From positions 186,001 through 250,000 of IMG/VR virus record IMGVR_UViG_3300032236_000747: a stretch of DNA of 64,000 bases; one strand, written 5' to 3'. Shown here in pieces: positions 4,078 through 59,071 of this stretch. The position numbers and the translations under genes were made by a program. The first letter of the stretch is position 1. Each line of letters begins with the position of its first letter. The notes under the pieces were generated by a model. It was not told the DNA's origin, ran no database searches, and saw only the letters and a list, made by a program, of their open reading frames with translations.

Positions 4078-7000
4078 ATGTCAATAGCAGAAAGCCTAAG
4101 TTTTTTCCTCTCAACCGCAACTACTACTGCGACCATATTCACCTATTCTCCGGAAAGCATTCTTAACCCTGCTGCGAGTACTAGTACCAATACAGGTGCT
4201 CTAACTGTAGTAGGCGGTGTTGGTGTAGGCGGCAGCATTTATGCGGGAAACATTTACAGTAATGGTACATTAATTACTTCCGGTGGTAGCGGAACTACTG
4301 CTACTAACACAGCCAGCGGATTGTTAATAGGTTATACAAATACTGCAACTTATAACGCAGGCTTAGGTTATCAGTCGGGTAACTTGACCATGACTGGCGC
4401 TAATAACCTGGCTATTGGTCGGTGTGCTCTATGCATTAATACTACTGGCACTAATAATACTGCTTTAGGATATGGCGCATTATATTGTAATACATACGGC
4501 AACAATAATTTTGCTATAGGTTATAATGTCCTTAAGTGTAATACTACTGGTTTTAATAATATCGCAATTGGCTGTAATGCTCTATGCGGTAATACCACAG
4601 GACAAATGAACATTGCCTTTGGTACTTGTGCCGGCGGAAGTGGAAGCTACAATTTTGCCGCAGGTTGTAATGCAATGTATAGCGCCAACGGTAACAGTAA
4701 TATTGGTATTGGACCTTTTGCACTAACAATTGTTTCGGGAAGCTATAATGTAGCACTCGGTCCTTATACTATGCAAAGTGCTTCTAGCGCCTGTAATAAC
4801 TTTGCAGCAGGGTTTCGCTCACAACAATGTGTAACCACTGGTTGCAATAACTTTTCACAAGGCTTATGTGCTCTCTACGGTAATACTACCGGTTGCAATA
4901 ACTTTGCTGTAGGTTATCAATCTATGGGATGTACTAACGGCGGTAGCAATAATATAGCTATTGGACAATGTACTTTACGTGCCAACATTACCGGCTCTTT
5001 TAATATTGCATTAGGATGTGGTGCTCTTCAATCTAATACAGCCAGTAATAATATTGCTGTAGGCTATCAAACATTGTATTGTAACACAGCCGGAACCTAT
5101 AATATTGCGCTAGGTTATAACGTATTATACAATAACAGTGTAGGTTGTGGAAACTTTGCAGGTGGCACTTCGGCTCTTTACAGTAATACTACCGGTTGCA
5201 ATAACTTTGCTGTTGGAAACTTATCACAGTATTCTAGCACTGTTGGATGTAATAATATTTCTGTTGGATTTGATTCTCTTTTTTCTAATATCAGCGGTTC
5301 TAATAATATTGCGCTTGGTTATTTTACTTTATTTTGCAGTACAGCATCTAACAATATTGCTATTGGTGGCTCATCTCTAAGATACGCTAGCTACGGTGCA
5401 AATAATATTGCACTAGGTTGTAACACATTATATTGTAATTCTACGGGTTGTAATAACCTTGCTCTAGGTATATGTGCTCTTTATTGCAATACCGGTAGCA
5501 ACAACATAGCACTAGGTACTAGTGCAGGTTCTTCCCTTGCTATTGCCTGCAACAATGTAATCATAGGTGGCTATGGTGCTGTTAACTTTGCTAACAGCAA
5601 CAGTAACATCATCTTAGCCACAGGCGCAGGAGTAGTTCAACAACTACATAATGCCCAGGGTGCTGTTAGCTTTGGTTCAACAAGCTCATTTGGTGCAGCC
5701 GGCCAGGTACTATTAAGTAATGGTCCAAGTGCTCCTCCTACATGGGTTAATACTAGTTCGCTTGGATTAGGTGGTGGCGGCGGAGGTGCTGGCGCAAGTT
5801 TAAACACTTACTGCTCATTGATTATTCAAGGCGCAACTGCTGGTTCAAGCACAGGTCTAAATAACTTTGCCGTTGGATGTTGCGCATTATTTGCCAATAC
5901 TACTGGTGTTAATAATGTAGCGTTAGGTATATATACTCTTAAACTTAACACCTACGGTAGTAATAACTTTGCTGCTGGCTGCGTAGCTCTATGCGCAAAC
6001 ACCAGCGGATGCCATAACGTTGCGATTGGTTTTGGCGCACTAACTGCAAACTTAACTGGTTCCAATAATACAGCGATTGGGTGCGGTGCTCTTAGAAGTA
6101 ACACTTCCGCATGCCATAATACTGCTATTGGCTGTCAAGCTCTTGCTTGTAATACCATTGGTGGTAATAACACCGCTATAGGTGCCACAGCACTCAAATG
6201 TACTTCAACTGGTTGTAACAATATTGGTATAGGCTATGCTGCCCTAACATCTAATGTTACTGGTTGCAGTAATATAGGTATGGGATACGGTGCCCTTTAC
6301 AGCAATATTACTGGCAGTCAAAACATTGCTCTCGGTCAAAGTACCTTATGTTGTAGCCTTACTGGAAATAATAATACCGCGATTGGTCAGAATGCTGGCT
6401 GCGCTATTATAGGCGGTTCAAATAACACTATTATAGGTGGTTATGGTGCTGTTAACTTTGCTAACAGCAATAGTAATATTATTATAGCCACCGGTACAGG
6501 TACAGTTCAACAACTACATAATGCCCAGGGTGCTGTTAGCTTTGGTTCAACAAGCTCATTCGGTACTGCTGGTCAAGTATTATGTAGTCAAGGACCTAGT
6601 TTACCACCTGTGTGGGCTACAGTAAGTGCCGGCGGAGGTAGTTCGGCAACTTCTATCAGTTTAGGCACAGTATATGCATATACTCCGTCTGCTCTTGGTA
6701 ACTCAAATCTAGGATACCTAGCTGGCAACTCAACAATGACCGGATGTAATAACATCAGCATTGGATGTTGTGCTAACTGTTCTTTAACTTCAGCGTGCCA
6801 TACTATTGCTATTGGCGGTTACGCACTAAAATCTGGAACTACCGGCTATGGTAATATAGCAATTGGTTACAGTTCTGGATGTTTAACCAACGGCGGTCTT
6901 AACAACGTTGCAGTTGGTGCGTGTGCGCTGAGATGCAATATTACTGGTAATCAATCTATTGCGATTGGCGGCGGCGCACTAAACTGTAGTACTGCTAACT

Positions 7001-14932: not shown

Positions 14933-17440
14933 GTGTCATCAAGAAATAGTGTTCAGCATTTTATATCAACTACTGAACCCAATAACGTACAGTTAGGTGA
15001 CGAGTGGTTAAATCCCACAACCGGTATTCTATACAAACGAACACTGGTCAATGGATCTGTTGCCTGGGCAGCTACCGGTCAAACTAACTCTAGTAATGTT
15101 ACATTGTTTAGTGGCGGTCAGTCTGGTCAAGTACTGCAGATAGTCAATAATACACCTACCTGGGTTAATACCAGTACTTTGATAGCGGTTGCTAGTAGTG
15201 GCGGCGGCGCAAGTTTAAATGCCAGCTGTTCTTTGATTATTAACGTATTTAATGCTGGTTCCGGTCCGGATAATATAGCAATAGGAGCCTATGCCCTTTG
15301 CTCAACTACTGCTGGCTGCAATATTGCACTTGGTCGTTCAGCACTGTTATCTAATACTACAGGTGTTTATAATTTTGCTGCCGGAGTCAACACTCTCGGA
15401 AGTAATACTTACGGTAATCATAATGTAGCCATTGGCGGAACAGCTCTTTACTCTAATACCAGCGGTGGATGTAATATTGCCATTGGCGTAAACACACTTT
15501 TTAAAAATACTAGCGGTTTTAATAATTTTGCTGCTGGCAGTAATGCGTTAACGTGTAATACTACAGGAAATAATAACACAGCTATTGGGTATTATGGACT
15601 GAAAAGTAACACCTATGGTATCAATAATACAGCGATCGGTTGCGGTGCACTCTGCTGCAATATTTCAGGTAATAGCAATACTGCTATTGGTTTTTATGCG
15701 TTAAGCAGAAGTAAAACATCAAATAATAACGTAGCAATCGGTTATTGTGCTTTATATTCGTTCAACGGCGGCGCAAGCTATGGAGGTTGTAATATTGCCA
15801 TAGGCACAGGTACCATGGCTTTAATAACATCTGGTTGTAATAATATTGCCATGGGCAATAATGCATTATGTTCCTCTCTTCTTAACGCCACATTTAATGT
15901 TGCTATTGGTAATAATGCAATGTCTACTACCTGTCTTTCTGACAGCAACGTAGCAATAGGACCTAGTGCTCTTAGGGGGGTTGTGGGAGTATGTAACGTT
16001 GCGTGTGATAGTGTTGCGATTGGTTCAGGTGCTTTAGGCTCTAGTGCTTGTTCTAAGTACGACGTAGCCATGGGCTATTCACCACTTAGTCAAAATACTG
16101 GTACAGGTAATGTTGCTATAGGACAGTTTGCTATGTATGCTAGTCTGTCGGCCTGCCACAGTATTGCAATCGGTAGTAATGCGTTAAGCTGTGCCTGTTG
16201 TGCTAACCTTAACATAGCACTAGGGTGCTATGCTCTAGCATGTTCATTATCGGGTACACAAAATATCGCAATCGGATCTACTGCTGCTTGCGCACTTGCT
16301 CAAGGCTACGGTAACGTGGCTATCGGATGTTGTGCTCTAGGTTTTTCAAATGTCGGATGTGATAATGTGTTCATTGGTCGAAATACTGGCCGAGGATCAA
16401 ACACTACCAGCAGCGCCGGCGTTCATAATCTGGCATTAGGTTATGGTGCATTAGTTAATAATAATGCTAATAGTTATAATATAGCCATGGGGTATCAAAG
16501 TCAGTATTGTGCTTCAAGCACATGTCAGAACATATCATTGGGTCGTTTATCAATGACGTGTGCGCTCACTGGCGCTAACAATATTGCCATTGGTTATTGT
16601 TCACTCTTTGCAAACTGCGGTCCTAATAACGTTGCCTTGGGATATGGCACAAACCCTGCCGGCGGAACTGGTAATATTTCTATAGGTAGCTATGCTAACT
16701 CTAACGTAAATGGAAACTACAATATAGCAATCGGCACATGTGCAAGCCTTGGCTGTAGCCTAGGTGCGCTATCTGGGTGTCATAATACTACTATGGGATT
16801 TAAAGCAGGATCCCTGTTGTGTTCAGCAGCCGTGCATAATCTTGCCATCGGCTGTGGCGCATTATGTAGTGCTTGTTTATCTTGTTGTAATATTGCTCTA
16901 GGTAATGGTACACTAATGTCAACTACTACCGGTAACAACAATACCGCAGTTGGTTATTGCGCAGGAACAACCAATACCTACGGAAATAATAATACATTTA
17001 TAGGTAGTGGAGCGTTTGGTGCTAGTGCTACTAGTTGTAATGCTATTACACTGGGTAATTCTAGTATTACCACAATTCGTGCTCAGGTAACTACCATTAC
17101 AGCACTATCAGATTGTCGTGATAAAACTAATATCTGCGGATTACCTATTGGACTTGATTTTATTCGTGCACTGCGTCCAGTTAAGTTTGACTGGAATATG
17201 CGAGATGGCGCCAAGGTAGGAATACCAGAAGCTGGATTTATTGCTCAAGAACTAGATGAAGTACAAACTAGATTTACAGCAACTGACTACCTAAACTTAA
17301 TCTTAAAAGAAAATACAGAACGATTAGAAGCTACTCCTGGTAAACTGTTACCAGTATTAGTAAAAGCAGTACAAGAACTAGCTCAAGAAAATGAAGATTT
17401 AAGATCTAGGATTGAAATCTTAGAAGGGAAAATAGTATAA
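14933..17440 (+). CDS. Cys-rich tail fibre with a C-terminal intramolecular chaperone (peptidase S74)
   Basis: GTG start after AGGAG. N-x-A-I-G repeats. The C-terminus has SDCRDKTNI...LRPVKFDW...GFIAQE...LVKAVQEL followed by a coiled coil. Confidence 0.85.
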   Translation: MSSRNSVQHFISTTEPNNVQLGDEWLNPTTGILYKRTLVNGSVAWAATGQTNSSNVTLFSGGQSGQVLQIVNNTPTWVNTSTLIAVASSGGGASLNASCSLIINVFNAGSGPDNIAIGAYALCSTTAGCNIALGRSALLSNTTGVYNFAAGVNTLGSNTYGNHNVAIGGTALYSNTSGGCNIAIGVNTLFKNTSGFNNFAAGSNALTCNTTGNNNTAIGYYGLKSNTYGINNTAIGCGALCCNISGNSNTAIGFYALSRSKTSNNNVAIGYCALYSFNGGASYGGCNIAIGTGTMALITSGCNNIAMGNNALCSSLLNATFNVAIGNNAMSTTCLSDSNVAIGPSALRGVVGVCNVACDSVAIGSGALGSSACSKYDVAMGYSPLSQNTGTGNVAIGQFAMYASLSACHSIAIGSNALSCACCANLNIALGCYALACSLSGTQNIAIGSTAACALAQGYGNVAIGCCALGFSNVGCDNVFIGRNTGRGSNTTSSAGVHNLALGYGALVNNNANSYNIAMGYQSQYCASSTCQNISLGRLSMTCALTGANNIAIGYCSLFANCGPNNVALGYGTNPAGGTGNISIGSYANSNVNGNYNIAIGTCASLGCSLGALSGCHNTTMGFKAGSLLCSAAVHNLAIGCGALCSACLSCCNIALGNGTLMSTTTGNNNTAVGYCAGTTNTYGNNNTFIGSGAFGASATSCNAITLGNSSITTIRAQVTTITALSDCRDKTNICGLPIGLDFIRALRPVKFDWNMRDGAKVGIPEAGFIAQELDEVQTRFTATDYLNLILKENTERLEATPGKLLPVLVKAVQELAQENEDLRSRIEILEGKIV

Positions 17441-17441
17441 C

Positions 17442-20400
17442 ATGACCATAGCTTTTAACATAGCTACTTTATTAAGTAGCACAGCTACTCAAACTATTGG
17501 TACTGCTACAAATAGTGCTGTTTCTGTAAACTTATCAGGCGGCGCCGCTGGCTCTTTACCCTACCAAAGTGCTCCTAATGCCACTGTATTTTTATCCGTA
17601 GGCACTAATGGACAGGTATTGCAGTTAGTTAGCGGAGTTCCAACTTGGGTTAACACCAGTACATTAATAGCAGCCGGCGCTGGTGGTGGCGCCAGTTTAA
17701 ACGCTTATTGTTCATTGATTATTCAAGGAGCAACTGTTGGGTCTAGCACTGGTCTAAACAACTTTGCCGTTGGATGTTGTGCTCTATTTGCCAACACCAC
17801 AGGTTGTAATAATATTGCCTTAGGTTTTAACAGTCTTAACGGAAATACTACAGGTAGTAATAATATTGGAATGGGCTACGGTTCTTTAAAAAATAGTGCC
17901 ACCGGCGTATGTAACATTGCTATCGGCATTCAAGCCATGTTCTGTAACTGTGGATATAATAATATTGCCATGGGCCAGGCCCTGGGTAGTAATGGTGTTG
18001 GTTCTATCAATGTTGCTATAGGTAATTTTGTTTTAAGCACAGCAGGTCATTCCGGGTGTTATAATATAGGTATAGGTAGCAACGCTCTTCAAAATAACGT
18101 AAGTGGTTGTAGCAATATTGCTCTTGGTTTTGCCTCTCTAATACTTAATAATGGCGGAAGCAATAACGTTGCGTTAGGACTGTGCGCCCTTTATAATAAT
18201 ACAGCAAGTAACAACATAGCCATTGGCAGCAATGCGCTAGTCTTAAATACTGCCAGCCAATTCAATACTGCAATAGGCATAGGTGCTGCTGCTGGACACT
18301 CTATTTTACTTAACTGTAGTAAAGGATGTAATACAGCAATAGGTTATTGTGCTTATAACTGCGTTGGCGGTTATGGTAATACTGCTATAGGTTTCTGTGC
18401 TATGAGTACAGGCACTGGCATAAACTATAATAATGTGGCACTGGGATACAAAGCTATGTCCTGTGTAGGTTGCTCAGCTAGCAGTTTTGGCAACGGATAC
18501 AATGTAGGCATCGGATATGGTGCAATGTCAAAGAGTGGTAACCAGGCCAACGTGGGCATTGGTTACCTTGCCTTAAATGGCGGACCAGCAGCTATTCCTG
18601 CTGATTTAGTAACAAATGCGTGTAATGTTGCCATAGGTACAACAGCAATGTCGTGTTCTACCGCAAGTATACATAATGTAGCAATAGGCGCCAGTGCATT
18701 AAAGGCAACAAAATGTGGGTGTTTTAATGTTGGTGTAGGAACCTGTGCAGGATACGGCATTGGTTCTCCGGCTTGTTTGAATACTTTTTTAGGAGCTTAT
18801 GCCGGTGGTGCTGGCTTGATTACCGGATGCTATAATGTTGGCATCGGTGCATGTTCAATGTATGCTGGTTCTTTTGCGGCAGGTTGTTTCAATATAGGTA
18901 TTGGGGCATGTACACACCGATTCGCTGTTAGTCCAGTTAATACCATAGCTATTGGTCAAACGGCCATGGGCGGCTCGTTGTGTACTACAGTTGATAATAT
19001 TGCTATTGGCTCATTTTCTATGTTTGGTTGCGGAATAAGTTCCAGCGGCGCTTGTAATATCGCAATTGGTTTGAACTCGATGTATACAAACTGTGCTGGC
19101 TATGGTAACGTAGCTATTGGTGCTAATACCATGGTCGGAGCTCCTTTTACTGGTTACACAGCATGCCTTAACGTGGCTATAGGACATTGTGCTCTAAATA
19201 CTGTTACTACTGCGATATCTAATATCGCTATTGGAGCTACTGCTCTAAAATCTAATACCAGCGGCTGTTATAATACAGCTATCGGATTGTGCGCATTGTA
19301 TAGTAACACTACTGGTCTTAGTAACGTAGCAATAGGAGTTAATACCTTACTTGGTAATACATACGGTTATAATAACTTTGCCGTTGGTCCAAACGCTCTG
19401 CGTTGTAATATCACAGGATGTAATAACATTGCTATAGGATATAGCGCCCTTTATAATAGCACTAGTGCCTTTAATATTGCTATTGGGTGTGCTGCCATGT
19501 GCTGTAACACTATCGGTACCTATAATGTTGCCATAGGAGACGGAGCAATACAATGTAACAGTACCGGTAAACAAAATGTAGCCGTTGGTGGTATAGCAAT
19601 GAACAGTAATACCAGCGGCTACGGTAATACTGCTATAGGTTATACTGCTATGGCATGTAATACTACCGGTGCAAACAACGTCGGAGTTGGGCGATATGCT
19701 TTATATGCTAATACTACCGGAAGTAATAATGTCGGATTAGGTGTCGGCGCACTATGCGGTAACATTACCGGAAATGCTAACATTGCTATTGGATATGATG
19801 CCCTTTATCAAAGTACAGGCGGTAACTGTAATATTTCGCTAGGTTCCTTCTCAATGCAGTCTAATACCAATGGTAGCTTTAATGTAGCACTTGGGTATCA
19901 ATCGTTGAGCTCTAATACCAGCGGTTGTTATAACATTATTATGGGATTTAACGCAGGGTATGCTAACACTGCTGGAAACTATAATAGTGCTATTGGATAC
20001 CAAGCTCTTAATAAAAATACCACTGGCTCTAATAATGTTGCTATAGGACCTAGTGCTCTTTATGGAAATACAACAGGTCAGCATAATATTGCTTTAGGGT
20101 TTAATACTTTAGTAACAGCGGGTTATGGATACTATAATGTAGCAATAGGATGTCAAGCACTATATCTTAATACTACTGGATGTAATAACGTTGCTATTGG
20201 TGGAATGGCAGGATGTACTAATACTACAGGCGTTAATAACGTATTCATAGGCTGTAATGCCAACGGTCTTGCTGCTACTTGCTCAAACACTATTACACTA
20301 GGTAATTCCAGTATCGCTACTATCCGTGCTCAGGTCACTACTATTACCGCGCTATCAGATTGTAGAGATAAAACAAATATTTGCGGATTACCAATTGGAC

Positions 20401-20675
20401 TTGATTTTATTCGTGCCCTACGCCCAGTTAAGTTTGACTGGAATATGCGAGATGGCGCCAAAGTAGGTATACCAGAAGCTGGATTTATTGCTCAAGATCT
20501 TGACGAAGTACAGAAGAAGTTCACAGCAACTGATTATCTAAACTTGATCATCAGCAACGAGGACGGGTCAAGATTGGAAGCAACGCCTGGTAAACTTTTA
20601 CCAGTTCTAGTACAAGCTGTTAAAGAACTAGCAGCCGAAGTAGATAGACTCCGTTTACTAGTAGAGCCACAATAA
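17442..20675 (+). CDS. Cys-rich tail fibre with a C-terminal intramolecular chaperone (peptidase S74)
   Basis: Same repeat type as 14933..17440, and an S74 domain nearly identical to it at the protein level. Confidence 0.85.
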   Translation: MTIAFNIATLLSSTATQTIGTATNSAVSVNLSGGAAGSLPYQSAPNATVFLSVGTNGQVLQLVSGVPTWVNTSTLIAAGAGGGASLNAYCSLIIQGATVGSSTGLNNFAVGCCALFANTTGCNNIALGFNSLNGNTTGSNNIGMGYGSLKNSATGVCNIAIGIQAMFCNCGYNNIAMGQALGSNGVGSINVAIGNFVLSTAGHSGCYNIGIGSNALQNNVSGCSNIALGFASLILNNGGSNNVALGLCALYNNTASNNIAIGSNALVLNTASQFNTAIGIGAAAGHSILLNCSKGCNTAIGYCAYNCVGGYGNTAIGFCAMSTGTGINYNNVALGYKAMSCVGCSASSFGNGYNVGIGYGAMSKSGNQANVGIGYLALNGGPAAIPADLVTNACNVAIGTTAMSCSTASIHNVAIGASALKATKCGCFNVGVGTCAGYGIGSPACLNTFLGAYAGGAGLITGCYNVGIGACSMYAGSFAAGCFNIGIGACTHRFAVSPVNTIAIGQTAMGGSLCTTVDNIAIGSFSMFGCGISSSGACNIAIGLNSMYTNCAGYGNVAIGANTMVGAPFTGYTACLNVAIGHCALNTVTTAISNIAIGATALKSNTSGCYNTAIGLCALYSNTTGLSNVAIGVNTLLGNTYGYNNFAVGPNALRCNITGCNNIAIGYSALYNSTSAFNIAIGCAAMCCNTIGTYNVAIGDGAIQCNSTGKQNVAVGGIAMNSNTSGYGNTAIGYTAMACNTTGANNVGVGRYALYANTTGSNNVGLGVGALCGNITGNANIAIGYDALYQSTGGNCNISLGSFSMQSNTNGSFNVALGYQSLSSNTSGCYNIIMGFNAGYANTAGNYNSAIGYQALNKNTTGSNNVAIGPSALYGNTTGQHNIALGFNTLVTAGYGYYNVAIGCQALYLNTTGCNNVAIGGMAGCTNTTGVNNVFIGCNANGLAATCSNTITLGNSSIATIRAQVTTITALSDCRDKTNICGLPIGLDFIRALRPVKFDWNMRDGAKVGIPEAGFIAQDLDEVQKKFTATDYLNLIISNEDGSRLEATPGKLLPVLVQAVKELAAEVDRLRLLVEPQ

Positions 20676-20739: not shown

Positions 20740-21675
20740 ATGGCTAAAACAATAATCTATATCGACGGCGGCGCCGGTCGTGTTATCGCAGCAATACCTG
20801 CACTACTCAAATTCCACAGATTAAACCCGAACTTAGATTGGGCAATCGTTATCCCTGCTTGGGATTATCTGCTTTGGAGCATTCCAGAACTTCAAGATCG
20901 CGTCTATGGCGCAGATACGAAAGGTATTTGGGACAATGTAATCAAAGACGCAGATGAAATAATGACTCCAGAGCCCTACAGACTACCTGCTTATTTCCGT
21001 CAAGAAATCAGCTTAGTTGAAGGATTTGATCGTGAGATCAATGGTACCAAAGATCACAGCGATCTAGGTGTTCCAAAAATGATTTTCAACAAAACTGAAG
21101 AGAAATGGGCAGTAAACACCATTGCTGATGTCAAGCAACAACAGCAAAAAGCTAAGACTATTGTCATTCAACCATTTGGACGCGGCGCTACATTAGATCG
21201 CAATGACGTCATTGACAGCGCAAGTCGCAGTTTGAGTGCTGATGCGTATATCAGTTTAACTAAAAAACTTGCCGCAAGATATAACATGATCTTCTTTGGC
21301 GAACAACAACTCCAAATCACCACAGATAGTTACACAGTTAAACTACCTCCGCAGACTGATCTGCGTATGTGGGCATCATTGATTAGCTATGCTGATTACT
21401 TTGTTGGTGTTGATAGTGTGGGACAACACATGGCTCGTGCTACAGGTTGTCCAGGAACAGTTATTTTTGGATCAACATTCCCAGTTAACACAAGTTATCC
21501 TGATTATTTCCAGATCATTGAAAGAGCAGGACAAAAGAAATATAGTCCGATTCGTATCACTGGATTAGACAGTGTGTTAGCGGATCGTTACAATGATACA
21601 ATGATGGACTTTGAAGAAAGTGAAATTACTTCAATCTACAATCAAATTGTAGCGGACATTGAGAAAACAAAATAA
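20740..21675 (+). CDS. GT-B glycosyltransferase, GT9 (heptosyltransferase)-like
   Basis: N-terminal DGGAGRVIAAIPAL, middle IVIQPFG, and ADYFVGVDSVGQHMARATGCPGTVIFGST, which matches the GT9 'DSg.mHlA.a.g.p.v.lfG.t' signature. Confidence 0.75.
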   Translation: MAKTIIYIDGGAGRVIAAIPALLKFHRLNPNLDWAIVIPAWDYLLWSIPELQDRVYGADTKGIWDNVIKDADEIMTPEPYRLPAYFRQEISLVEGFDREINGTKDHSDLGVPKMIFNKTEEKWAVNTIADVKQQQQKAKTIVIQPFGRGATLDRNDVIDSASRSLSADAYISLTKKLAARYNMIFFGEQQLQITTDSYTVKLPPQTDLRMWASLISYADYFVGVDSVGQHMARATGCPGTVIFGSTFPVNTSYPDYFQIIERAGQKKYSPIRITGLDSVLADRYNDTMMDFEESEITSIYNQIVADIEKTK

Positions 21676-23357
21676 TGTATAACATACTAGCAATAAACCC
21701 CGGACACAATGGTTCTGCTGCGCTAATATCAGACGGCAACGTTGTGTTCTATGCTGAAGAAGAGCGCCTAAGTCGCATGAAATATGACGGTAATCCATTT
21801 CGTGCTATGCTTACAGTACTAGAAGAAACACACGTAGACGAACTAGTCATTGGCGGTACCAGTCCAGACCTAGTCAAACTTCCGTGGACCTACGAAGATG
21901 CCTATACAGCATTGGTTCGTAAGTTTAATCCTAGTGTAAAAGTTACGAACTTGGGTCATCAACACCACCTGGGACATGCTGCCGCCGCATTTTACAACAG
22001 TGGATTTACTACAGCAGTAGCAGTTATTGCTGACGGTGCTGGCAGTGTGCATCAAGCTAAAATGGGGGAAGATGATAATGCTCCAATGACTTCTGGATTT
22101 GAAACAGAAAGCATTTATAAATGTGCATATCCTGTGACTTTTGATACTGTCTATAAGCGTTACGCAGACGGCAACGCTAGATATTTTGACAATGGTGTAC
22201 AAGAGTTTGATAACTCTGTTACTATTACCAAAGCCTACGAAGCAGTTAGTAACTATCTAGGATTTGGTTTTATTGAAGCAGGTAAGACCATGGGGCTCGC
22301 ACCTTATGGAAAATATGATCCAAATATTCCTAACTTTTTTGTAGAAGGCAAAGGTAACAAAAACTTATTAGAACCTATGTATCCAGCGGGGGCACTAATA
22401 GATGAGAACAGATTTGCTTACCTTCGCAGAACACAAGACCCTAAAGTTTGGCATCATGATTTTAGTAAAGTGCGCGACATAGATAAAAATCTAGCATGGC
22501 ACATACAGCAAGAATCACAAGAGCAAATCGGCGATCTCATAGAACTAGCAGTTCAAAAGACAGGTGAAAAGAATGTAGTTATCGCTGGCGGATATGGTTT
22601 AAACTGTGTTGCTAACTATTACTACCTCAAACGTTTCCCCGATCTAAATATCTATGTAGATCCAGTTAGTCACGATGGCGGAACTGCCCTAGGCCTAGCA
22701 TTGTTAGCTTGGCACCTATACAGTAATAGTAGTGTTCCTAATCCTCTTACTTCTTTGTATCTAGGTATTGATCCTGATTTAACTGAAATCAATACAGCTG
22801 AATTTAAGGTGCAGGACGTTACCGCAGACGACATAGCAGAACTATTAGTAAATCAAAATATTGTTGCTATGTTTAATGGTCGTGCAGAAGCAGGTCCTAG
22901 AGCATTAGGTAATCGTAGTATCATGTTTGATCCACGTAGACCAGACGGCAAAGACTTTGTCAACAAGGTTAAAGGTCGTGAATGGTTCCGCCCATTTGCT
23001 GGATCGGTATTAGAAGAACACGCAGACAAATGGTTCGAGATGCGAGGGCTAAAATCTAGTCCGTTTATGATGTATGCTATCAATGTGTTGCCTGAAAAAC
23101 TCGGAGAGATTCCTGCGGTTACACACGTAGACGGTACATGCCGTGTTCAGACAGTTAGTAAAACTGACAACGAAGCATATTACAACTTAATCAATGCGTT
23201 TTATAAAAAGACAGGTGTACCGATGGTGTTCAATACTAGTTTTAATCTAGCAGGCGATCCTCTAGTAGAAACAGTTGACGACGCTATTGACACACTTCGC
23301 CGCTCGGATATAAAATATCTATATCTACCTGCGTTAAACAAACTAATATCAAAATAA
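21675..23357 (+). CDS. O-carbamoyltransferase, NodU/CmcH/TobZ family
   Basis: GHNGSAAL, EEERLSR.K, HHLGHAA, DGAG, GKTMGLAPYG, GGYGLNCVAN, GRAEAGPRALGNRS, KGREWFRPFA, HVDGTCRVQTV and NTSFN motifs. Confidence 0.95.
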   Translation: MYNILAINPGHNGSAALISDGNVVFYAEEERLSRMKYDGNPFRAMLTVLEETHVDELVIGGTSPDLVKLPWTYEDAYTALVRKFNPSVKVTNLGHQHHLGHAAAAFYNSGFTTAVAVIADGAGSVHQAKMGEDDNAPMTSGFETESIYKCAYPVTFDTVYKRYADGNARYFDNGVQEFDNSVTITKAYEAVSNYLGFGFIEAGKTMGLAPYGKYDPNIPNFFVEGKGNKNLLEPMYPAGALIDENRFAYLRRTQDPKVWHHDFSKVRDIDKNLAWHIQQESQEQIGDLIELAVQKTGEKNVVIAGGYGLNCVANYYYLKRFPDLNIYVDPVSHDGGTALGLALLAWHLYSNSSVPNPLTSLYLGIDPDLTEINTAEFKVQDVTADDIAELLVNQNIVAMFNGRAEAGPRALGNRSIMFDPRRPDGKDFVNKVKGREWFRPFAGSVLEEHADKWFEMRGLKSSPFMMYAINVLPEKLGEIPAVTHVDGTCRVQTVSKTDNEAYYNLINAFYKKTGVPMVFNTSFNLAGDPLVETVDDAIDTLRRSDIKYLYLPALNKLISK

Positions 23358-51109: not shown

Positions 51110-52210
51110 ATGAGTTATTTGTTTACAAGCGAAAGTGTGTCAGAAGGACACCCAGATAAAGTTGCTGATGCGATCAGTGACGCCATTCTAGACCTAGTAA
51201 TGGCACAAGAAAATCCTGCACTACGTTGTGCATGTGAAACATTAGTTACTACCAATCAAGTAGTAGTTGCTGGCGAATACAAAGGCATCTTACATAATGA
51301 AGATGTTGAATCAGCTATTCGCAAAACAATCAAAAATATTGGATATGAACAAGATGGATTTAACTGGGAAACAGTTAACATCACAAATCTATTACACGGA
51401 CAAAGCGCAGATATTGCCTTGGGTACAGATACATTTGGTGCAGGTGACCAGGGACTAATGTTTGGATATGCCTGTGATGAAACTGACAGTCTTATGCCTA
51501 GTGCGATTTACTGGAGCCATAAGATTGTTGAAAAGTTAACCGTTGAACGTAAGGCAGGTAGATTACCTTGGTTAGGCCCAGACGCAAAGAGCCAAGTTAC
51601 ATTTGAATATGATGATGTTGGTCGTCCATCTCGCATTGCTAAAGTTGTTTGTTCTACACAGCACAGCGAAGACATGCCTATTGAAGTAGTACGTGCGGCA
51701 GTTGAAGAAGTTATTCGCGGTGTGTTACCCATGGAGTATATTGATGATAGAACTAGTTTCCATATTAATCCTACCGGTCGCTTTGTTATTGGAGGGCCTG
51801 ATGGAGATACTGGACTCACCGGAAGAAAAATTATCGTTGATACTTACGGTGGTTATAGTCCTCATGGCGGAGGTGCCTTTAGCGGAAAAGATCCTACTAA
51901 AGTTGATAGAAGTGCTGCTTACATGATGCGTTGGATTGCTAAGAATATCGTAGACAGTGGAAGAGCACGTTGGGCAACTTGTCAGATTAGTTATGCTATC
52001 GGTCTAGCTGAACCTATGAGCTTTTATATTGAAACCTACGACCCTGTTGTGTCACGTAACCTAGTTAGTTGGATTCAAGACAACATTGACCTAACTCCCA
52101 AAGGTATCATTGAACGCTTTGATCTATTCCGTCCGATCTACAGTTCAACTACAAATTACGGTCATTTTGGTAAAAAAGATTTACCATGGGAAGAAACTAA
52201 TCTATTCTAA
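51110..52210 (+). CDS. metK: S-adenosylmethionine synthetase
   Basis: FTSESVSEGHPDK, GAGDQG, PDAKSQVT, INPTGRFVIGGP.GD.GLTGRKIIVDTYGG, GGGAFSGKDPTKVDRS and YGHFG. Confidence 0.98.
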   Translation: MSYLFTSESVSEGHPDKVADAISDAILDLVMAQENPALRCACETLVTTNQVVVAGEYKGILHNEDVESAIRKTIKNIGYEQDGFNWETVNITNLLHGQSADIALGTDTFGAGDQGLMFGYACDETDSLMPSAIYWSHKIVEKLTVERKAGRLPWLGPDAKSQVTFEYDDVGRPSRIAKVVCSTQHSEDMPIEVVRAAVEEVIRGVLPMEYIDDRTSFHINPTGRFVIGGPDGDTGLTGRKIIVDTYGGYSPHGGGAFSGKDPTKVDRSAAYMMRWIAKNIVDSGRARWATCQISYAIGLAEPMSFYIETYDPVVSRNLVSWIQDNIDLTPKGIIERFDLFRPIYSSTTNYGHFGKKDLPWEETNLF

Positions 52211-53628: not shown

Positions 53629-53810
53629 AAGAGTTATCTCGCTTTACAAAAGATGATAAAACTGCTATCGTTAAAGGTGATGGCGGTAGTTATGTTGTTG
53701 AGTTATTTGTTAATAATCAACTAGTTGAAACAAAGGTCTTTGCCGAACATACTCTACGTATTGTTGAAAACAACGCCAAGACTTGGATTGAGAATGATAG
53801 CATTGGTTGA
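53625..53810 (+). CDS. Hypothetical protein
   Basis: 61 aa, ATGA-coupled. Confidence 0.6.
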   Translation: MKELSRFTKDDKTAIVKGDGGSYVVELFVNNQLVETKVFAEHTLRIVENNAKTWIENDSIG

Positions 53811-54489
53811 TCAACCTTTTACCTGTGTTCACTGTAGCAAGAGTTTTATGCAAGAGAAAACTCTCTATGCCCACATGTGTGAAAACAAACGCAGAGCCAT
53901 GCAGAAAGACGAGAAGCGTGTTCAGGCAGGCCTTCTAGTCTTTAATAGATTTTTTAGACTTACACAAAACGCCAAGAAAGACAAGACCTATGAGGACTTC
54001 ACTAAGAGTCCTTACTACAATGCGTTTGTTAAGTTTGGATCATTCATTTGTAATGTCAATCCTTTGTACCCTGACAAGTTTATTGACTATGTTATTAAGA
54101 GTGGCGTTAAGTTAGATCATTGGGCCAGTGATTCATTGTATGACAAATATCTCTATGACATCATCAAAACTGAACCAGTTGAATCAGCAGTTCAACGAAC
54201 TGTTAATCACATGATGGATTGGGGTGATACCAGCGGAGCACAGTTTAATCATTACTTTAACTATGTTAATATAAACAGATCTGTACAAGACATACGCAAT
54301 GGAAAAATAACTCCTTGGATATTGTTGAATACCAAAACAGGCAAGGAACTTTTATCAAAGTACAGCGACGAACAGTTAGAACTTATTGCTCCTGCCCTAG
54401 ACATTCCATATTGGTCGAGAAAGTTTAAACAGGTACCGGCGGATGTTGCGTTGGTGAAAGAAATATGCAAAGAGGCAGGCATAGAATGA
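53794..54489 (+). CDS. Protein with an N-terminal C2H2/C2HC-type zinc finger
   Basis: ATG at 53794; FTCVHCSKSFMQEKTLYAHMC. Confidence 0.7.
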   Translation: MIALVDQPFTCVHCSKSFMQEKTLYAHMCENKRRAMQKDEKRVQAGLLVFNRFFRLTQNAKKDKTYEDFTKSPYYNAFVKFGSFICNVNPLYPDKFIDYVIKSGVKLDHWASDSLYDKYLYDIIKTEPVESAVQRTVNHMMDWGDTSGAQFNHYFNYVNINRSVQDIRNGKITPWILLNTKTGKELLSKYSDEQLELIAPALDIPYWSRKFKQVPADVALVKEICKEAGIE

Positions 54490-54797
54490 ATCAAGATGTG
54501 TTATTGAAAAAGTTATGTCAGGAATTTGGCGGAACTGCAACTGTTAGTGAACAAAGATTTGTAAGGATCCACCCGCCGGGCTCCTGGGATTTTATGAGCA
54601 CCATTGCAGATTATAAATCCACAATAATAGAAGGTGTTGCTATACATATTCCGAAAGATAGGCTCGACGATTTTTTAAGTGTGTTTGATGAACAGAAGTA
54701 TTTAGAAATGCAAATAAGGGAAAACATACCTGCTGTAAAAATAGCCTACGAACGCTATCGAATGTTGTTAAAAATGTGTGGGAGCGACTATGCCTGA
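54486..54797 (+). CDS. Hypothetical protein
   Basis: ATGA overlap at 54486; ends with PAVKIAYERYRMLLKM. Confidence 0.65.
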   Translation: MNQDVLLKKLCQEFGGTATVSEQRFVRIHPPGSWDFMSTIADYKSTIIEGVAIHIPKDRLDDFLSVFDEQKYLEMQIRENIPAVKIAYERYRMLLKMCGSDYA

Positions 54798-55368
54798 TGT
54801 TGATATCGACTTCTTAAATAGGTTAGATGTACTTGATATAGTCAAGCATGTTCCCGCAAGACTTGAAGACGGTAAAAAACATAACACAGGCGTTTATTGT
54901 CAATCCATTCCAGTAAATCCCCTAACCGGACTTGCTAATATAAACTACACAGAAGCAGAAGCTAGGGGATATTTTAAGATTGACTTTTTGAATGTAAGTG
55001 CCTATTCAGGCATCAGAAATGAAGATCACATCAAAGAGTTACTAGCAGTTGAACCTCTATGGGATCTGTTATATGAGAAAGATATTTGTGATCAACTATT
55101 TCATATCAACGGTTATCATACATTATTAGCAACGCTAAAGCCTACTAGTATATTAGACCTAGCCACTGTGCTAGCGTTGATTAGACCGGGTAAAAAGCAC
55201 TTAGTTGACCAGTGCGTAAAGGAAGGATTTGGTAGTATACAGAAGGAAGTATGGACCAAGACTGACGAAGGATATAGTTTTAAAAAGAGTCATGCTGTAG
55301 GCTATGCCCACGTTATTGTTATGCAGTTAAATTTAATCTGCGAAAATATCAGCCTCGGGTTTTCTTAG
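54790..55368 (+). CDS. Minimal DNA polymerase III alpha (DnaE)-like catalytic core, 192 aa
   Basis: GGAG RBS. MPDVDIDF, KHNTGVY, GYFKIDFLNV, LALIRPG and GYSFKKSHAVGYA match DnaE motifs in the correct order. Confidence 0.85.
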   Translation: MPDVDIDFLNRLDVLDIVKHVPARLEDGKKHNTGVYCQSIPVNPLTGLANINYTEAEARGYFKIDFLNVSAYSGIRNEDHIKELLAVEPLWDLLYEKDICDQLFHINGYHTLLATLKPTSILDLATVLALIRPGKKHLVDQCVKEGFGSIQKEVWTKTDEGYSFKKSHAVGYAHVIVMQLNLICENISLGFS

Positions 55369-55732
55369 GATTTTTGACTAGTTGTATTGAACGTCTTTTG
55401 ATTCGTTTTTCTGCTATGTCCCCTAGATTTACAGTGGGTCCGAAAACGATTTCTATGTCTTTGCTATTAAATGTTTTGATATAGGGCCGGTAATAGATCA
55501 TTGTATCTTTTAGGAAAATATTAATAGGTATGCGTCTATTTGACTCCCACCACCAAGTTTCTCCTAGTTCTAAAAATACCTTTTTCTCATCGTCCGATTT
55601 CATGCATTCCAGATCATAGATACTGGTAACATAATCGTCGTAGTTGATAACAATTCCTACATATTCCACGTCGTTTGACTTGACGCAGGTAATAAATGGA
55701 AACTTTTCCTGAAACGTGTTCTTGATTGTCAT
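55349..55732 (-). CDS. Conserved hypothetical protein
   Basis: 127 aa containing WWWESNRRIPINIFL; minus-strand TATAAATA at 55770-77. Confidence 0.7.
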   Translation of the reverse strand: MTIKNTFQEKFPFITCVKSNDVEYVGIVINYDDYVTSIYDLECMKSDDEKKVFLELGETWWWESNRRIPINIFLKDTMIYYRPYIKTFNSKDIEIVFGPTVNLGDIAEKRIKRRSIQLVKNPKKTRG

Positions 55733-56618: not shown

Positions 56619-57611
56619 ATGAGTTTCATGCTGAACGCTTTGCTAGCGGTCTTACCTCCAAATAGAAAACAAACACCCAGTGGATGGATGAGTTTTGATG
56701 CACCTTGTTGTCATCACAGGGGAGAAACTCGTGATGACCGCAAACGTGGCGGAGTAATGATATCCGGTGACGCTTTTAGCTATCATTGCTTTAACTGTAA
56801 CTTCAAAGCAGGATGGAGTCCGGGTAAAACTCTAAGCACCAACACACGCAAGTTGTTCAGTTGGTTGGGTGTATCAGACACAGAAATAGCCAGACTGGCC
56901 ATGGATGCACTGCGTGCGCATGAGTCGTTGCCTGTTAAGAAAAGAGAATACAGTTTTGAACTCAAAGAAGTTGAGCTTCCAGAAAACTGTCTACCCATAT
57001 TAGATCCTAGTCTAGTTGACAGGGCCGATACTAGATGGTTAGATGCTGTTATGTATCTAGCTGATCGCAAAATAGATCTTGATTGGTATCCATTTATGTG
57101 GGCAGATGCCGATGGTTATAGAGATCGTGTTATCATACCCTTTTACCAAGATAACAAGATAGTCGGTTATACAGCACGTAAAATCAAAGAAGGCAAGCCC
57201 AAATACCTAGCACACAATCAGCCTGGGTATGTGTTTAACCTAACTGGTCAACCTCGTGAAAGAAAGTATGTTATAGTAGTTGAAGGACAGTTTGATGCCA
57301 TATCTATAGACGGTGTGTGCGTAGGTCACAATGATCCCAACGAAACGCAAACATCGAGAATAAACGCACTGGCCCGTGAAGTTATAGTTGTACCAGATAG
57401 AGACAAAGCAGGCGCACAACTTCTTAACTCTGCGCTTGCCAATGGCTGGAGTGTGAGCTTACCACCCTGGGGCGATGACATAAAAGATGTAGCAGACGCA
57501 GTTAAGAGATATGGTAGATTATACACGCTAGCCGCGATATTAGAATACAGAACCGCTAATCAGCTAAAAATACAAGTAATGCAAAAGAAACTACAAGGAC
57601 TACATAAATGA
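56619..57611 (+). CDS. DNA primase (Zn-binding + TOPRIM; T4 gp61-like)
   Basis: APCCHH...YHCFNC, RVIIPF, GYTAR, PKY, VVEGQFDA and PDRDKAG. Confidence 0.9.
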   Translation: MSFMLNALLAVLPPNRKQTPSGWMSFDAPCCHHRGETRDDRKRGGVMISGDAFSYHCFNCNFKAGWSPGKTLSTNTRKLFSWLGVSDTEIARLAMDALRAHESLPVKKREYSFELKEVELPENCLPILDPSLVDRADTRWLDAVMYLADRKIDLDWYPFMWADADGYRDRVIIPFYQDNKIVGYTARKIKEGKPKYLAHNQPGYVFNLTGQPRERKYVIVVEGQFDAISIDGVCVGHNDPNETQTSRINALAREVIVVPDRDKAGAQLLNSALANGWSVSLPPWGDDIKDVADAVKRYGRLYTLAAILEYRTANQLKIQVMQKKLQGLHK

Positions 57612-59071
57612 TCAAACAAGACAAAGACAAACCTAACTACGATATTGAAATACAAAAACTCTACTTGGAAATGTTTCTCAGCGATGCTGAAACGTTTAGT
57701 CGTTGCCAAAGCATATTTGACCCTGATAATTTTGACCAAAAGTTACAGGAGACAGCAAGGTTTATTACCACATATGTAGACGAGTATAAACTTATTCCGG
57801 ACGTTAGTATTGTCAATGCTACTTGTAAAAAGGACCTACAGATAGTATCTTTGCCCGCTCAAAACTATGAATGGCTCAAGGATGAATTTGAGCAATTTTC
57901 CAGGCACAAGGCCTTGGAACGTGCGATCATGAAGAGCTTTGATTTGCTGGAAGAAGGCGAGTATGGGCCAGTTGAAAAGCTGGTCAAGGACGCTATTCAA
58001 ATCAGTTTAACCAAGGACATGGGCACTGATTACTTCGAAGATCCCAAAGCACGTCTAACTGCGCTCAAGGACGGAAATGGTCAAATTTCCACTGGTTGGC
58101 CCAGCATTGACAAAAAATTGTATGGGGGCTTTAATCGAGGTGAACTCAATATTTTCTGTGCTGGATCAGGCGGTGGTAAGAGTTTGTTTCTTGCTAACAT
58201 GGGCGTAAACTGGGCCATGCAGGGTCTAAACGTGCTTTACTTGACCTTTGAATTAAGTGAAAAATTAGTGGCCATGCGCCTGGATTCTATGGTCACAGGT
58301 ATCACAACCAGAGACATCTTTAAGAGCATTGATGATGTTGAATTAAAGGTTAAAATGATCGGAAAAGCTTCGGGAAGCATACAAATCAAGTATATGCCCA
58401 GCGGAAAAAATTGTAACGATATTCGGTCATATTTGAAGGAATATCAGGTCAAAAAAGGCCTAAAACCTGACGTAATTTTAATAGATTACCTGGATTTAAT
58501 GATGCCACTAAATGTGAAGGTATCGCCCAGCGATCTCTTTGTTAAAGACAAATATGTGTCAGAAGAGATACGTAACTTGGCCATGGAAACACAGTGTATC
58601 ACTGTAACAGCTAGTCAGCTAAACCGCGCTGCCGTTGAAGAAATTGAGTTCGATCACAGCCATATCAGCGGTGGCTTGTCAAAGATCATGACAGCGGATA
58701 ACGTTATTGGTATCTTTACCAGTCGTGCTATGCGTGAGCGTGGACGCTATCAAATCCAGTTTATGAAGACACGTTCCAGCTCAGGCGTGGGTCAAAAGGT
58801 AGACTTGGAATTTAACGTGGAAACCCTGCGTATCAGTGATCTAGGTGATGAAGGCGATGTGGGTGCAGGCAGCAACAATAGGCCTGGATCAAACACTACT
58901 CAGGGCAGTGTATATGCTGGACTCAAGCGTACCAGCACAGTCACAGCAGATCCAGAAACAGGTGAAATCGCAGATCCCACAGTGGGCATAAATGCTCCAA
59001 AAATACGTGCTGAAGTAGGTGGTTCGCAACTGCGCAGTATGTTGGCTAAACTTAACTCAGAACGAGATTAA
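57608..59071 (+). CDS. Replicative DnaB-family helicase (T4 gp41-like)
   Basis: STGW, GSGGGKS, TFELSE, IDYLDLM, TASQLNR and KTRSS. Confidence 0.95.
   Translation: MIKQDKDKPNYDIEIQKLYLEMFLSDAETFSRCQSIFDPDNFDQKLQETARFITTYVDEYKLIPDVSIVNATCKKDLQIVSLPAQNYEWLKDEFEQFSRHKALERAIMKSFDLLEEGEYGPVEKLVKDAIQISLTKDMGTDYFEDPKARLTALKDGNGQISTGWPSIDKKLYGGFNRGELNIFCAGSGGGKSLFLANMGVNWAMQGLNVLYLTFELSEKLVAMRLDSMVTGITTRDIFKSIDDVELKVKMIGKASGSIQIKYMPSGKNCNDIRSYLKEYQVKKGLKPDVILIDYLDLMMPLNVKVSPSDLFVKDKYVSEEIRNLAMETQCITVTASQLNRAAVEEIEFDHSHISGGLSKIMTADNVIGIFTSRAMRERGRYQIQFMKTRSSSGVGQKVDLEFNVETLRISDLGDEGDVGAGSNNRPGSNTTQGSVYAGLKRTSTVTADPETGEIADPTVGINAPKIRAEVGGSQLRSMLAKLNSERD

What the first reader, a model, noticed from the sequence alone, without database searches (positions are those of the whole stretch)
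54790..55368. A 192-aa C-family polymerase: DnaE reduced to its catalytic motifs
Seen: PDVDID (two catalytic Asp), KHNTGV, KIDFL (third Asp), ALIRPG and YSFKKSHA..Y occur in DnaE order. The long segments between them are deleted internally, and there is no PHP, HhH, OB or clamp-binding region. It has its own RBS and a clean stop, and no other dnaE pieces flank it. Established: bacterial DnaE is over 1000 aa, and T4-like phages replicate with a B-family polymerase. Inference: internal compaction with retained catalytic residues argues for a functional non-replicative nucleotidyltransferase (primer synthesis or extension, terminal transfer, repair or signal synthesis), located near the primase and helicase genes. 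Similar stand-alone modules may already be annotated in related jumbo phages, but I know of no established function.
Basis: partly seen in the sequence, partly recalled or inferred. Interest (0 to 1): 0.75.

Follow-up and report, generated by a model that had tools for sequence, protein, structure and literature searches.

The report
Half of a split mini-polymerase
This 192-residue jumbo-phage protein is the metal-binding C-terminal half of a miniature DnaE-type polymerase whose nucleotide-binding N-terminal half is a separate gene 187 kb away, a two-gene arrangement described by comparative genomics in 2021 but, as far as I could find, never tested at the bench.

Summary
It is not a self-contained polymerase. 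It starts exactly at the PDxDxDF strand and lacks the N-terminal half of the palm, which carries the GS nucleotide-binding loop. That half is a separate 173-aa gene in the same 354,680-bp phage genome (G000:C1:53219-53740). It ends at EFLK, the DnaE residues that come just before PDxDxDF. The two halves co-occur one-to-one in about 92-96 sequenced phages, always apart (11-187 kb) and co-oriented. Each has thousands of metagenomic relatives. Three rare natural proteins of 375-376 aa fuse them. The pair is predicted to bind (score 0.91; best of 3 controls 0.00). The Asp triad is invariant in 80 diverse homologues, and dN/dS is about 0.08. The genome also has a PolB and no PHP, HhH or other dnaE piece. 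Iyer et al. 2021 (PMC7824862) already described this "minimal, split Pol III alpha" in group 2.2 jumbo phages, so this is a new member of a known, biochemically untested kind. The most likely role is a two-subunit accessory DNA polymerase at the fork or in repair.

The parts
54790..55368 (+). C-terminal (Mg2+-binding / finger-remnant) subunit of the split minimal Pol III alpha, 192 aa (P0001)
54779..54783 (+). Shine-Dalgarno GGGAG, 6 nt before the ATG. The upstream ORF's stop (54795-54797) overlaps the start, which suggests translational coupling.
   Evidence: read directly
54796..54810 (+). Codons of D3, D5 and D7 in the PDVDIDF strand. D3 and D5 are invariant and D7 is >=90% conserved in 80 homologues. 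They correspond to the first two catalytic Asp of DnaE.
54877..54894 (+). KHNTGV (K30-V35), with H31 and G34 >=90% conserved. It is the counterpart of the DnaE KH.GG strand. Only 26 residues separate it from the DxD strand, so the thumb is missing.
54976..54984 (+). K63-I64-D65, with K63 and D65 invariant. It aligns with E. coli K553/D555, the third catalytic Asp.
55183..55194 (+). R132-P133-G134-K135 of ALIRPGK. R132 and P133 are invariant. It aligns with E. coli ALFRPG 636-641 (finger remnant).
55282..55293 (+). K165-K166-S167-H168 of FKKSHA, with H168 >=90% conserved. It aligns with E. coli NKSH 757-760.
55349..55732 (-). Small convergent gene (phrog_11637, function unknown) overlapping the 3' end by 20 nt. 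The same arrangement occurs in PA5oct, GAP32, Atu_ph07, Slickus01, L015 and next to the fused gene in L010.
53794..54489 (+). Conserved upstream neighbour, a phage-only protein with an N-terminal C2H2-like zinc finger (phrog_11058). Function unknown.
56619..57611 (+). DnaG-type primase, a conserved downstream neighbour
   Evidence: weak Pfam DNAG_N; annotated as primase in relatives
57608..59071 (+). DnaB/gp41-type replicative helicase, a conserved downstream neighbour

Best explanation
The ORF encodes one of two obligate subunits of a miniature C-family (DnaE-type) polymerase. The C-half contributes the beta-strands carrying the three catalytic Asp (D3, D5, D65) and K63. It also contributes a helical remnant of the fingers (R132-P133, K165, H168). 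The partner is the 173-aa N-half, encoded 187,050 bp upstream on the same strand at G000:C1:53219-53740, outside the window. The N-half contributes the helices and the invariant GxGRGS loop that hold the incoming nucleotide's triphosphate in DnaE. It also has a family-specific N-terminal extension of about 95 residues that is predicted to wrap around the C-half. The halves are not joined by an intein or at the nucleic-acid level. They are predicted to assemble non-covalently into a nucleotidyltransferase of about 42 kDa with no PHP, thumb, clamp-binding or OB domain. Shown here: the homology, the complementarity at the exact break point, co-occurrence, natural fusions, conservation and purifying selection. 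Predicted only: that the halves bind. Inferred: that the heterodimer is an active, distributive, templated DNA polymerase assisting the phage's PolB replisome. It could extend primers made by the neighbouring primase, as B. subtilis DnaE does before hand-off to PolC, or fill gaps in repair. My odds are about 0.9 for an obligate two-gene enzyme, about 0.55 for a templated DNA polymerase and about 0.25-0.3 for primer extension or hand-off specifically.
For: PF07733 finds a second place in the genome. It is a 173-aa ORF ending at EFLK, with PF07733 positions 16-94 at E 2.5e-13, above the cut-off, and phrog_11127 at E 1.7e-44. N-half 100-172 aligns with E. coli alpha 320-392, and C-half 1-11 aligns with M. 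tuberculosis DnaE1 413-423, so only about 5 linker residues are missing at the break. Against an unsplit phage DnaE-like ORF, N-half 88-173 matches residues 11-97, right before that protein's own LPDVDIDF (prob 96.6%). At E<=1e-15 the C-half is in 96 phage records and the N-half in 92, one copy each, with matching genus tallies. Both halves were found in every record I checked: PA5oct, GAP32, Atu_ph07, G001 and Slickus01. Three natural fusions of 375-376 aa keep all motifs, and they sit at the C-half locus. Complex prediction: score 0.91, best of 3 controls 0.00. That mark was reached by 58 of 80 solved complexes and 2 of 110 mismatched pairs; the counts hold only roughly because I supplied my own alignments. 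The predicted interface includes the GS loop (N 134-147) against the DxD strand (C 2-9). Interface residues are more conserved than the rest. D3, D5, K63, D65, R132 and P133 are invariant in 80 representatives at 30-51% identity, and G139, G141, R142, G143 and S144 are invariant in the N-half. dN/dS is 0.083, against 0.071 for the helicase. Synteny with primase and helicase is conserved. PolB is present, and no PHP, HhH or other finger hit exists in the genome. Iyer et al. 2021 reached the same reading. PMC3664799 gives the DnaE-primase-helicase precedent.
Against: No biochemistry exists for any member. The complex score may reflect the model's memory of intact Pol III alpha rather than real binding. 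The thumb, the E. coli 642-739 finger segment, which by my recollection holds the conserved Arg pair that contacts the triphosphate, and all clamp- and DNA-binding C-terminal domains are missing. Stable primer-template binding is therefore unexplained, and I found no conserved tail motif for a clamp. The two genes lie in different blocks 11-187 kb apart, and co-expression has not been shown. No RNA data were available. dS is near saturation, so the dN/dS ratio is rough.
Confidence: 0.7

Rival explanations
1. The assembled heterodimer is a nucleotidyltransferase but not a templated DNA polymerase. It might instead do template-independent tailing, RNA or tRNA 3'-end work, nucleotide-signal synthesis, or nucleotidylation of a protein or small molecule.
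For: It has lost the thumb, most of the fingers and every DNA- or clamp-binding domain. The Pol-beta-like fold supports many non-polymerase transferases (established knowledge). The genome already has a PolB.
Against: The parts that were kept are DnaE-specific finger motifs (RPG and KSH), not just the generic transferase core, and they are invariant or nearly so. Synteny with primase and helicase is conserved from 141-kb to 490-kb phages. Neither half matches any defence or signalling model.
Confidence: 0.2
2. One reading: the 192-aa protein is by itself a functional stand-alone nucleotidyltransferase.
For: It has its own RBS and stop, is under strong selection, and models alone at pLDDT 96.
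Against: It begins at the DxD strand and lacks the preceding helices and the GS loop of the fold. That piece exists as a separate, strictly co-occurring gene, is fused to the C-half in three natural proteins, and is predicted to bind it.
Confidence: 0.05
3. A catalytically dead relic or scaffold: the protein keeps only a structural or regulatory role in the replisome.
For: Massive domain loss. No activity has been shown.
Against: Both halves' catalytic residues are invariant across relatives as low as 30% identical. dN/dS is about 0.08. There are thousands of intact homologues of constant length.
Confidence: 0.03
4. The halves are joined into one chain by a split intein, RNA trans-splicing or a DNA rearrangement.
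For: Cyanobacterial dnaE is split and rejoined by a split intein (Caspi et al. 2003, cited in PMC3919608).
Against: No intein sequence is present. The N-half stops at EFLK and the C-half starts MPDVDIDF, and Pfam finds no intein family. The probable source run holds the locus as one colinear contig without joints, which is weak evidence. The break point differs from the cyanobacterial one.
Confidence: 0.02

Closest known systems
Minimal split DNA Pol III alpha of group 2.2 jumbo phages (Iyer, Anantharaman, Krishnan, Burroughs & Aravind 2021, Viruses 13:63, PMC7824862); PHROG families 11778 (C) and 11127 (N)
   Same: It has the same two families, the same split into an N-terminal NTP-binding protein and a C-terminal Mg2+/template-binding protein from distant genes, the same company (PolB, gp41-type helicase, primase), and the same lack of other Pol III domains.
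   Different: Nothing essential differs. This copy is from an uncultured 355-kb phage and is at most 47% identical to sequenced phages. Here the halves lie 187 kb apart, against 30-45 kb in RaK2, GAP32 and PA5oct. My analysis adds these points: rare natural fusions, nested among split forms; the pair in a 141-kb phage; the family's size in metagenomes; a passing complex prediction.
Bacterial replicative Pol III alpha, DnaE (E. coli 2HNH, Taq 3E0D, M. tuberculosis 5LEW)
   Same: Pol-beta-like palm with the GS loop, DxD and a third Asp, and the finger motifs ALxRPG and NKSH in the same order. It is the only structural match in the PDB.
   Different: About 365 aa in two chains, against more than 1100 aa in one. 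It has no PHP, thumb, middle finger segment, beta-clamp-binding/HhH, OB or tau-binding domains.
Intein-split DnaE of cyanobacteria (DnaE-n / DnaE-c)
   Same: A dnaE gene encoded as two distant genes.
   Different: The cyanobacterial pair is full length, is split within the fingers, and is rejoined covalently by a split intein. Here there is no intein, the break lies inside the palm, and assembly would be non-covalent.
B. subtilis DnaE working with PolC (PMC3664799)
   Same: [quoted passage not shown] Here the gene sits next to primase and helicase in a genome with another main polymerase. This is an analogy only.
   Different: B. subtilis DnaE is full length and its role has been shown experimentally. 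Nothing has been shown for the phage enzyme.
Unsplit compact DnaE-like ORFs of related phages (563-579 aa, L097:2200-3891)
   Same: They lack PHP, are phage-encoded, and have the same motifs.
   Different: They are a single chain with the full PF07733 palm, a thumb and a finger domain. They are only about 30% identical to the N-half, and they coexist with a normal split C-half in the same contigs, so they are a separate gene and not the ancestor in place.

Membership tests
Split minimal Pol III alpha of group 2.2 jumbo phages (Iyer et al. 2021) | A C-terminal unit of about 190 aa carrying the Mg2+-binding Asp residues and a finger remnant | tested here: met
   phrog_11778 E 1.2e-60 over 3-186; D3, D5 and D65 invariant
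Split minimal Pol III alpha of group 2.2 jumbo phages (Iyer et al. 2021) | A separate N-terminal NTP-binding unit encoded by a distant gene in the same genome | tested here: met
   173-aa ORF at G000:C1:53219-53740, 187 kb away; PF07733 E 2.5e-13; phrog_11127 E 1.7e-44
Split minimal Pol III alpha of group 2.2 jumbo phages (Iyer et al. 2021) | Accompanied by a family B polymerase, with no other Pol III domain in the genome | tested here: met
   PolB in a 904-aa frame; no PHP; no HHH_6; the finger family hits only this ORF
Split minimal Pol III alpha of group 2.2 jumbo phages (Iyer et al. 2021) | The two units reconstitute one enzyme | tested here: inconclusive
   This rests on prediction and on natural fusions only. 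Complex score 0.91, best of 3 controls 0.00; the mark was reached by 58 of 80 solved and 2 of 110 mismatched pairs. Fusions P0228, P0391 and P0392. No experiment exists.
Split minimal Pol III alpha of group 2.2 jumbo phages (Iyer et al. 2021) | Polymerase activity | not testable with these tools
   No biochemical report found
Canonical bacterial DnaE / Pol III alpha | N-terminal PHP domain | tested here: not met
Canonical bacterial DnaE / Pol III alpha | A complete palm (GS loop plus Asp triad) in one polypeptide, scoring above the PF07733 cut-off | tested here: not met
   The ORF has no PF07733 hit, only DNA_pol3_finger at 19.3 bits, below the cut-off of 22. The GS loop is in another gene.
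Canonical bacterial DnaE / Pol III alpha | Thumb, full fingers, clamp-binding/HhH and OB domains | tested here: not met
   26 residues separate DxD from KH..G, against about 82 in an unsplit phage DnaE-like ORF. E. coli 642-739 has about 11 residues as its counterpart. No HHH_6.
Intein-split DnaE | Split-intein halves at the break | tested here: not met
   No intein family in either half, and the extein-like sequence runs to the very ends
Pol-beta-like nucleotidyltransferase superfamily | G[SG] loop, then [DE]x[DE], then a third acidic residue, in one fold | tested here: met
   This is met only by the pair: GRGS in the N-half, and D3/D5 plus D65 in the C-half. The C-half alone does not meet it.

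The most novel reading that the evidence does not exclude
The split mini-Pol III is a genuine two-subunit DNA polymerase, the smallest C-family polymerase known. On this reading it is coupled to the neighbouring primase and helicase and extends primers before hand-off to PolB, a phage counterpart of Pol alpha or B. subtilis DnaE. The split would itself be functional, because activity would appear only when two separately placed and separately regulated genes are both expressed.
Probability: 0.2. Interest if true: 0.7.

Novelty: new member of a known kind. Interest (0 to 1): 0.35.

Why it matters
If active, the pair would define the minimal catalytic core of the C-family replicases: about 365 aa, with no PHP, thumb or clamp-binding domain. 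It would give a tractable system for asking what a Pol III palm needs in order to work. It would also be a second example, after Firmicutes, of a replisome that combines two unrelated or specialised polymerases. The family is abundant, with at least about 7,900 protein clusters per half in public metagenomes, and is conserved from 141-kb to 490-kb phages, yet it is untested. For this scan the result is mostly a correction. The ORF is half of an enzyme that has already been described, not a new stand-alone polymerase.

Tried and rejected
(1) A single-chain model of the whole enzyme. I built block alignments on the natural fusion with the halves as rows (A5, A6), but MAFFT laid the N-half rows on the C-half block. 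I discarded both, so no model of the fusion was made.
I left those sequences out and resent only window, genome and search-result proteins.
(3) A clamp-binding tail. The C-terminal tails of 54 motif-anchored C-half representatives (of the 79 in A4) vary in length and sequence, with no motif. A Pfam search for a gp45-type clamp gave only a weak hit inside a 1905-aa ORF, which I did not accept.
(4) A 'PHP-N-half fusion' suggested by hits inside 567-579-aa frames in G002 and G003. These turned out to be a separate unsplit DnaE-like gene. P0404 and P0405 are ordinary truncated DnaE.
(5) dN/dS against G001. dS is saturated for both halves, so no ratio can be given. No relative close enough was available for the N-half.
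(6) RNA evidence or joints. Only one DNA run, probably the source, holds the locus, as one colinear contig. No RNA run holds it.
(7) Temporal expression of the PA5oct orthologues. The main text does not mention them and no supplement is held.
(8) Defence-system models gave no hit.
(9) The promoter and terminator scan showed nothing above shuffled expectation.
(10) The search for related loci with the diverse alignment failed for lack of a conserved stretch.
(11) The first 95 residues of the N-half resemble nothing outside the family.

Full report
OBSERVATION. The window holds an ORF at 54790-55368 (+) of 192 aa (P0001), with a TAG stop. A GGGAG ribosome-binding site lies 6 nt before the ATG. 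The upstream ORF's stop overlaps the start as ATGCCTGA.

The resemblance to DnaE is real but distant. Pfam gives only the finger domain, below its cut-off (19.3 bits against 22). NCBIfam gives weak Pol III alpha hits. PHROGs gives a dedicated 197-position family, phrog_11778, at E 1.2e-60, and the full-length phage DnaE family phrog_405 at E 1.1e-8. A profile of 79 diverse homologues hits only Pol III alpha chains in the PDB, with a best E of 1.2e-5. It places K.D.L on E. coli 553-557, ALxRPG on 636-641 and FxKSH on 756-760. The AlphaFold model of the protein has pLDDT 96.4 and pTM 0.89. Its top 14 Foldseek PDB matches are Pol III alpha from Taq, M. tuberculosis and E. coli. The first eight have prob 1.00, the fourteen have TMq 0.39-0.51, and everything below them has prob <=0.06.

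The protein begins exactly at the PDxDxDF strand. In DnaE that strand follows helices and a GS loop that bind the incoming nucleotide (established from the Pol III alpha structures; my own knowledge). The ORF has no counterpart of them.

Searching the whole 354,680-bp virus record with PF07733 found one other place, G000:C1:53498-53746. It is a 173-aa ORF (P0002, G000:C1:53219-53740, + strand). It contains an invariant GxGRGS loop and ends at EFLK. It scores PF07733 positions 16-94 at E 2.5e-13, above the cut-off, and phrog_11127 (171 positions) at E 1.7e-44. N-half residues 100-172 align without gaps to E. coli alpha 320-392. C-half residues 1-11 align to M. tuberculosis DnaE1 413-423. The two ORFs therefore meet at one point in the palm, with only about five linker residues missing.

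Against an unsplit phage DnaE-like protein, the N-half profile matches residues 11-97, immediately before that protein's own LPDVDIDF (prob 96.6%). Neither half contains an intein. The genome has no PHP domain, no HHH_6 domain, and no finger hit other than this ORF. It does have a PolB in a 904-aa frame.

THE TWO HALVES BELONG TOGETHER.
(a) Co-occurrence. At E<=1e-15 the C-half is found in 96 of 50,697 phage records and the N-half in 92, one copy each. The genus tallies are nearly identical: Escherichia 34/33, Pseudomonas 11/11, Klebsiella 11/10, Erwinia 8/8, Salmonella 8/8, Xanthomonas 4/4 and Yersinia 4/4. I confirmed both halves directly in PA5oct, GAP32 and Atu_ph07, in the 259-kb contig G001 and in the 141.6-kb Alishewanella phage Slickus01.
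(b) They are always apart and co-oriented. The distances are 11 kb (Slickus01), 34 kb (GAP32, RaK2), 43 kb (PA5oct), 174 kb (G001), 182 kb (Atu_ph07) and 187 kb here.
(c) The break point is fixed. Every N-half ends at EFLK, give or take a few residues.
(d) Natural fusions exist. An exhaustive HMMER search of 1.84 billion representatives found 387 relatives of the C-half. Of the 150 best listed, all are about 180-230 aa or shorter fragments except one of 375 aa (P0228), whose residues 75-180 match the N-half at 41% identity. A search with that fusion found two more, of 376 aa and 78-81% identity, from independent samples. All three are open through a conserved 9-10-residue linker and keep every motif. 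The gene downstream of the fusion is homologous to the small convergent gene downstream of the window's C-half, so the fusion sits at the C-half locus. In a maximum-likelihood tree of C-halves, the fusion is nested three supported nodes deep among split forms (98/85, 99/93, 100/92; midpoint root only). It is most simply a secondary re-joining.
(e) Complex prediction. The score is 0.91 in three runs, and the best of 3 controls is 0.00. That mark was reached by 58 of 80 solved complexes and 2 of 110 mismatched pairs. These counts hold only roughly because I supplied my own alignments, and the pass may reflect memory of intact Pol III alpha. About 186 contacts are predicted, including the GS loop (N 134-147) on the DxD strand (C 2-9), and much of N-half 1-31 and 66-79. 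Those segments belong to an N-terminal extension of about 95 residues that resembles nothing outside the family. Modelled alone, the N-half is weakest at 67-73 and 141-144 (pLDDT 78 overall). Even so, its best PDB matches are again C-family polymerases. Predicted interface residues are more conserved than the rest: 0.90 against 1.53 bits in the N-half (p<1e-4), and 1.96 against 2.28 bits in the C-half (p=0.027). This is confounded by burial and by the active site.

SELECTION. Across 80 representatives at 30-51% identity, D3, D5, K63, D65, R132 and P133 are invariant. D7, H31, G34, K135, K165 and H168 are at least 90% conserved. Against an 83%-identical relative, dN is 0.112, dS is 1.353 and dN/dS is 0.083, compared with 0.071 for the helicase and 0.146 for the primase next door. 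dS is near saturation, so these values are rough. Each half has at least about 7,900 protein clusters of constant length in the 5.8-billion-protein collection.

CONTEXT. The window is a Rak2/121Q/PA5oct-type jumbo-phage segment with virion paralogues, tail spikes, sheath and terminase. These are followed by a UvsX/RecA-like protein, a UvsW-like helicase, MetK, the C-half, a DnaG-type primase and a gp41/DnaB helicase. The local gene order is conserved in PA5oct, GAP32, Atu_ph07, Slickus01 and metagenomic relatives. It runs: zinc-finger protein, a small ORF, the C-half, a small convergent gene, a virion protein, primase, helicase. The N-half lies upstream of a GroES/gp31-like gene here and in PA5oct and GAP32, and near the clamp loader in GAP32. 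Neither half carries a virion (MS) note in the PA5oct or GAP32 annotation.

WHAT IS KNOWN. Iyer et al. [quoted passage not shown] It accompanies PolB, and they propose that it helps with one strand or with repair and that it models an ancestral form. I found no later paper that names it and no biochemistry. The 2014 survey of bacterial Pol III alpha homologues lists no such form, only intein-split cyanobacterial DnaE. This ORF is therefore a new member of a described kind.

MECHANISM. The shown and predicted steps are set out above. By inference, the pair forms a small distributive DNA polymerase. The DnaE-specific finger motifs were kept, not just the generic transferase core, and the gene's place beside primase and helicase is conserved. 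Both points favour a templated, fork-associated role. [quoted passage not shown] The loss of the thumb and of all DNA- and clamp-binding domains, with no conserved tail motif to replace them, keeps a non-templated transferase role open at roughly 0.2.

LIMITS. There are no expression data. No coordinates of the complex were available for checking active-site geometry. No single-chain model of the fusion could be made. The tree has no outgroup root. Co-occurrence rests on tallies plus five direct checks, not on a record-by-record match.

Noticed in passing
L097:2200-3891 (-) in G003 (IMGVR_UViG_3300020220_004906); L098:2325-4058 (-) in G002: Two related phage contigs that carry a normal split C-half in the usual synteny also carry a separate unsplit compact DnaE-like ORF of 563-577 aa. 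It has no PHP but has the full PF07733 palm (E 1e-41) and a finger domain (E 6e-15). The window's own genome has no such ORF. This bears on whether the split form arose by reduction.
   Followed up: partly
P0228, P0391, P0392; locus L010:1066-2193: Rare natural fusions of the N-half and C-half (375-376 aa) from independent metagenomes, nested among split forms in the C-half tree. I did not see them mentioned in the passages of the 2021 paper that I read.
   Followed up: yes
OQ508957.1 (Alishewanella phage Slickus01, 141.6 kb): C-half 68346-68957, N-half about 79811-80038: The split pair also occurs in a phage well under the 200-kb 'jumbo' limit. It has the same primase/helicase synteny, and the halves are only 11 kb apart.
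   Followed up: partly
window 55349-55732 (-): A small convergent gene (phrog_11637, function unknown) overlaps the 3' end of the C-half gene by 20 nt. This overlapping tail-to-tail arrangement is conserved in every relative I looked at, including next to the fused gene.
   Followed up: partly
window 53794-54489 (+): A conserved upstream neighbour, a phage-only 231-aa protein with an N-terminal C2H2-like zinc finger (phrog_11058, E 2e-57). It has no structural relative outside phages. Function unknown.
   Followed up: partly
window 51110-52210 (+): A full-length S-adenosylmethionine synthetase (MetK), with all three Pfam domains at E 4e-33 to 5e-58, sits inside the phage's recombination/replication block.
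   Followed up: no
window 21675-23357 (+): A Nol/NodU-like carbamoyltransferase (phrog_1601, E 5.5e-154) lies among the tail-spike and structural genes.
   Followed up: no
L097:6748-7935 (-): In relative G003 an ORF with a radical-SAM-like CxxxCxxC motif is inserted between helicase and primase. QueC-like and endonuclease III-like ORFs follow the helicase. None of this is seen at that position in the window. These calls were read by eye from the translations and were not scanned.
   Followed up: no
window 787-3993 and 12082-14919 (+); 14933-17440 and 17442-20675 (+); 4078-12075 (+): Two paralogous virion proteins (phrog_5838, E about 1e-255 each), two paralogous tail-spike-like proteins, and a 2665-aa ORF between them that I did not examine.
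   Followed up: no
L027:965-1579 (G001): In this 71%-identical relative the C-half reads CDIDIDF instead of PDVDIDF, and the longest ORF starts 12 codons further upstream. The Pro before the first Asp is therefore not conserved, although the Asp residues are.
   Followed up: no
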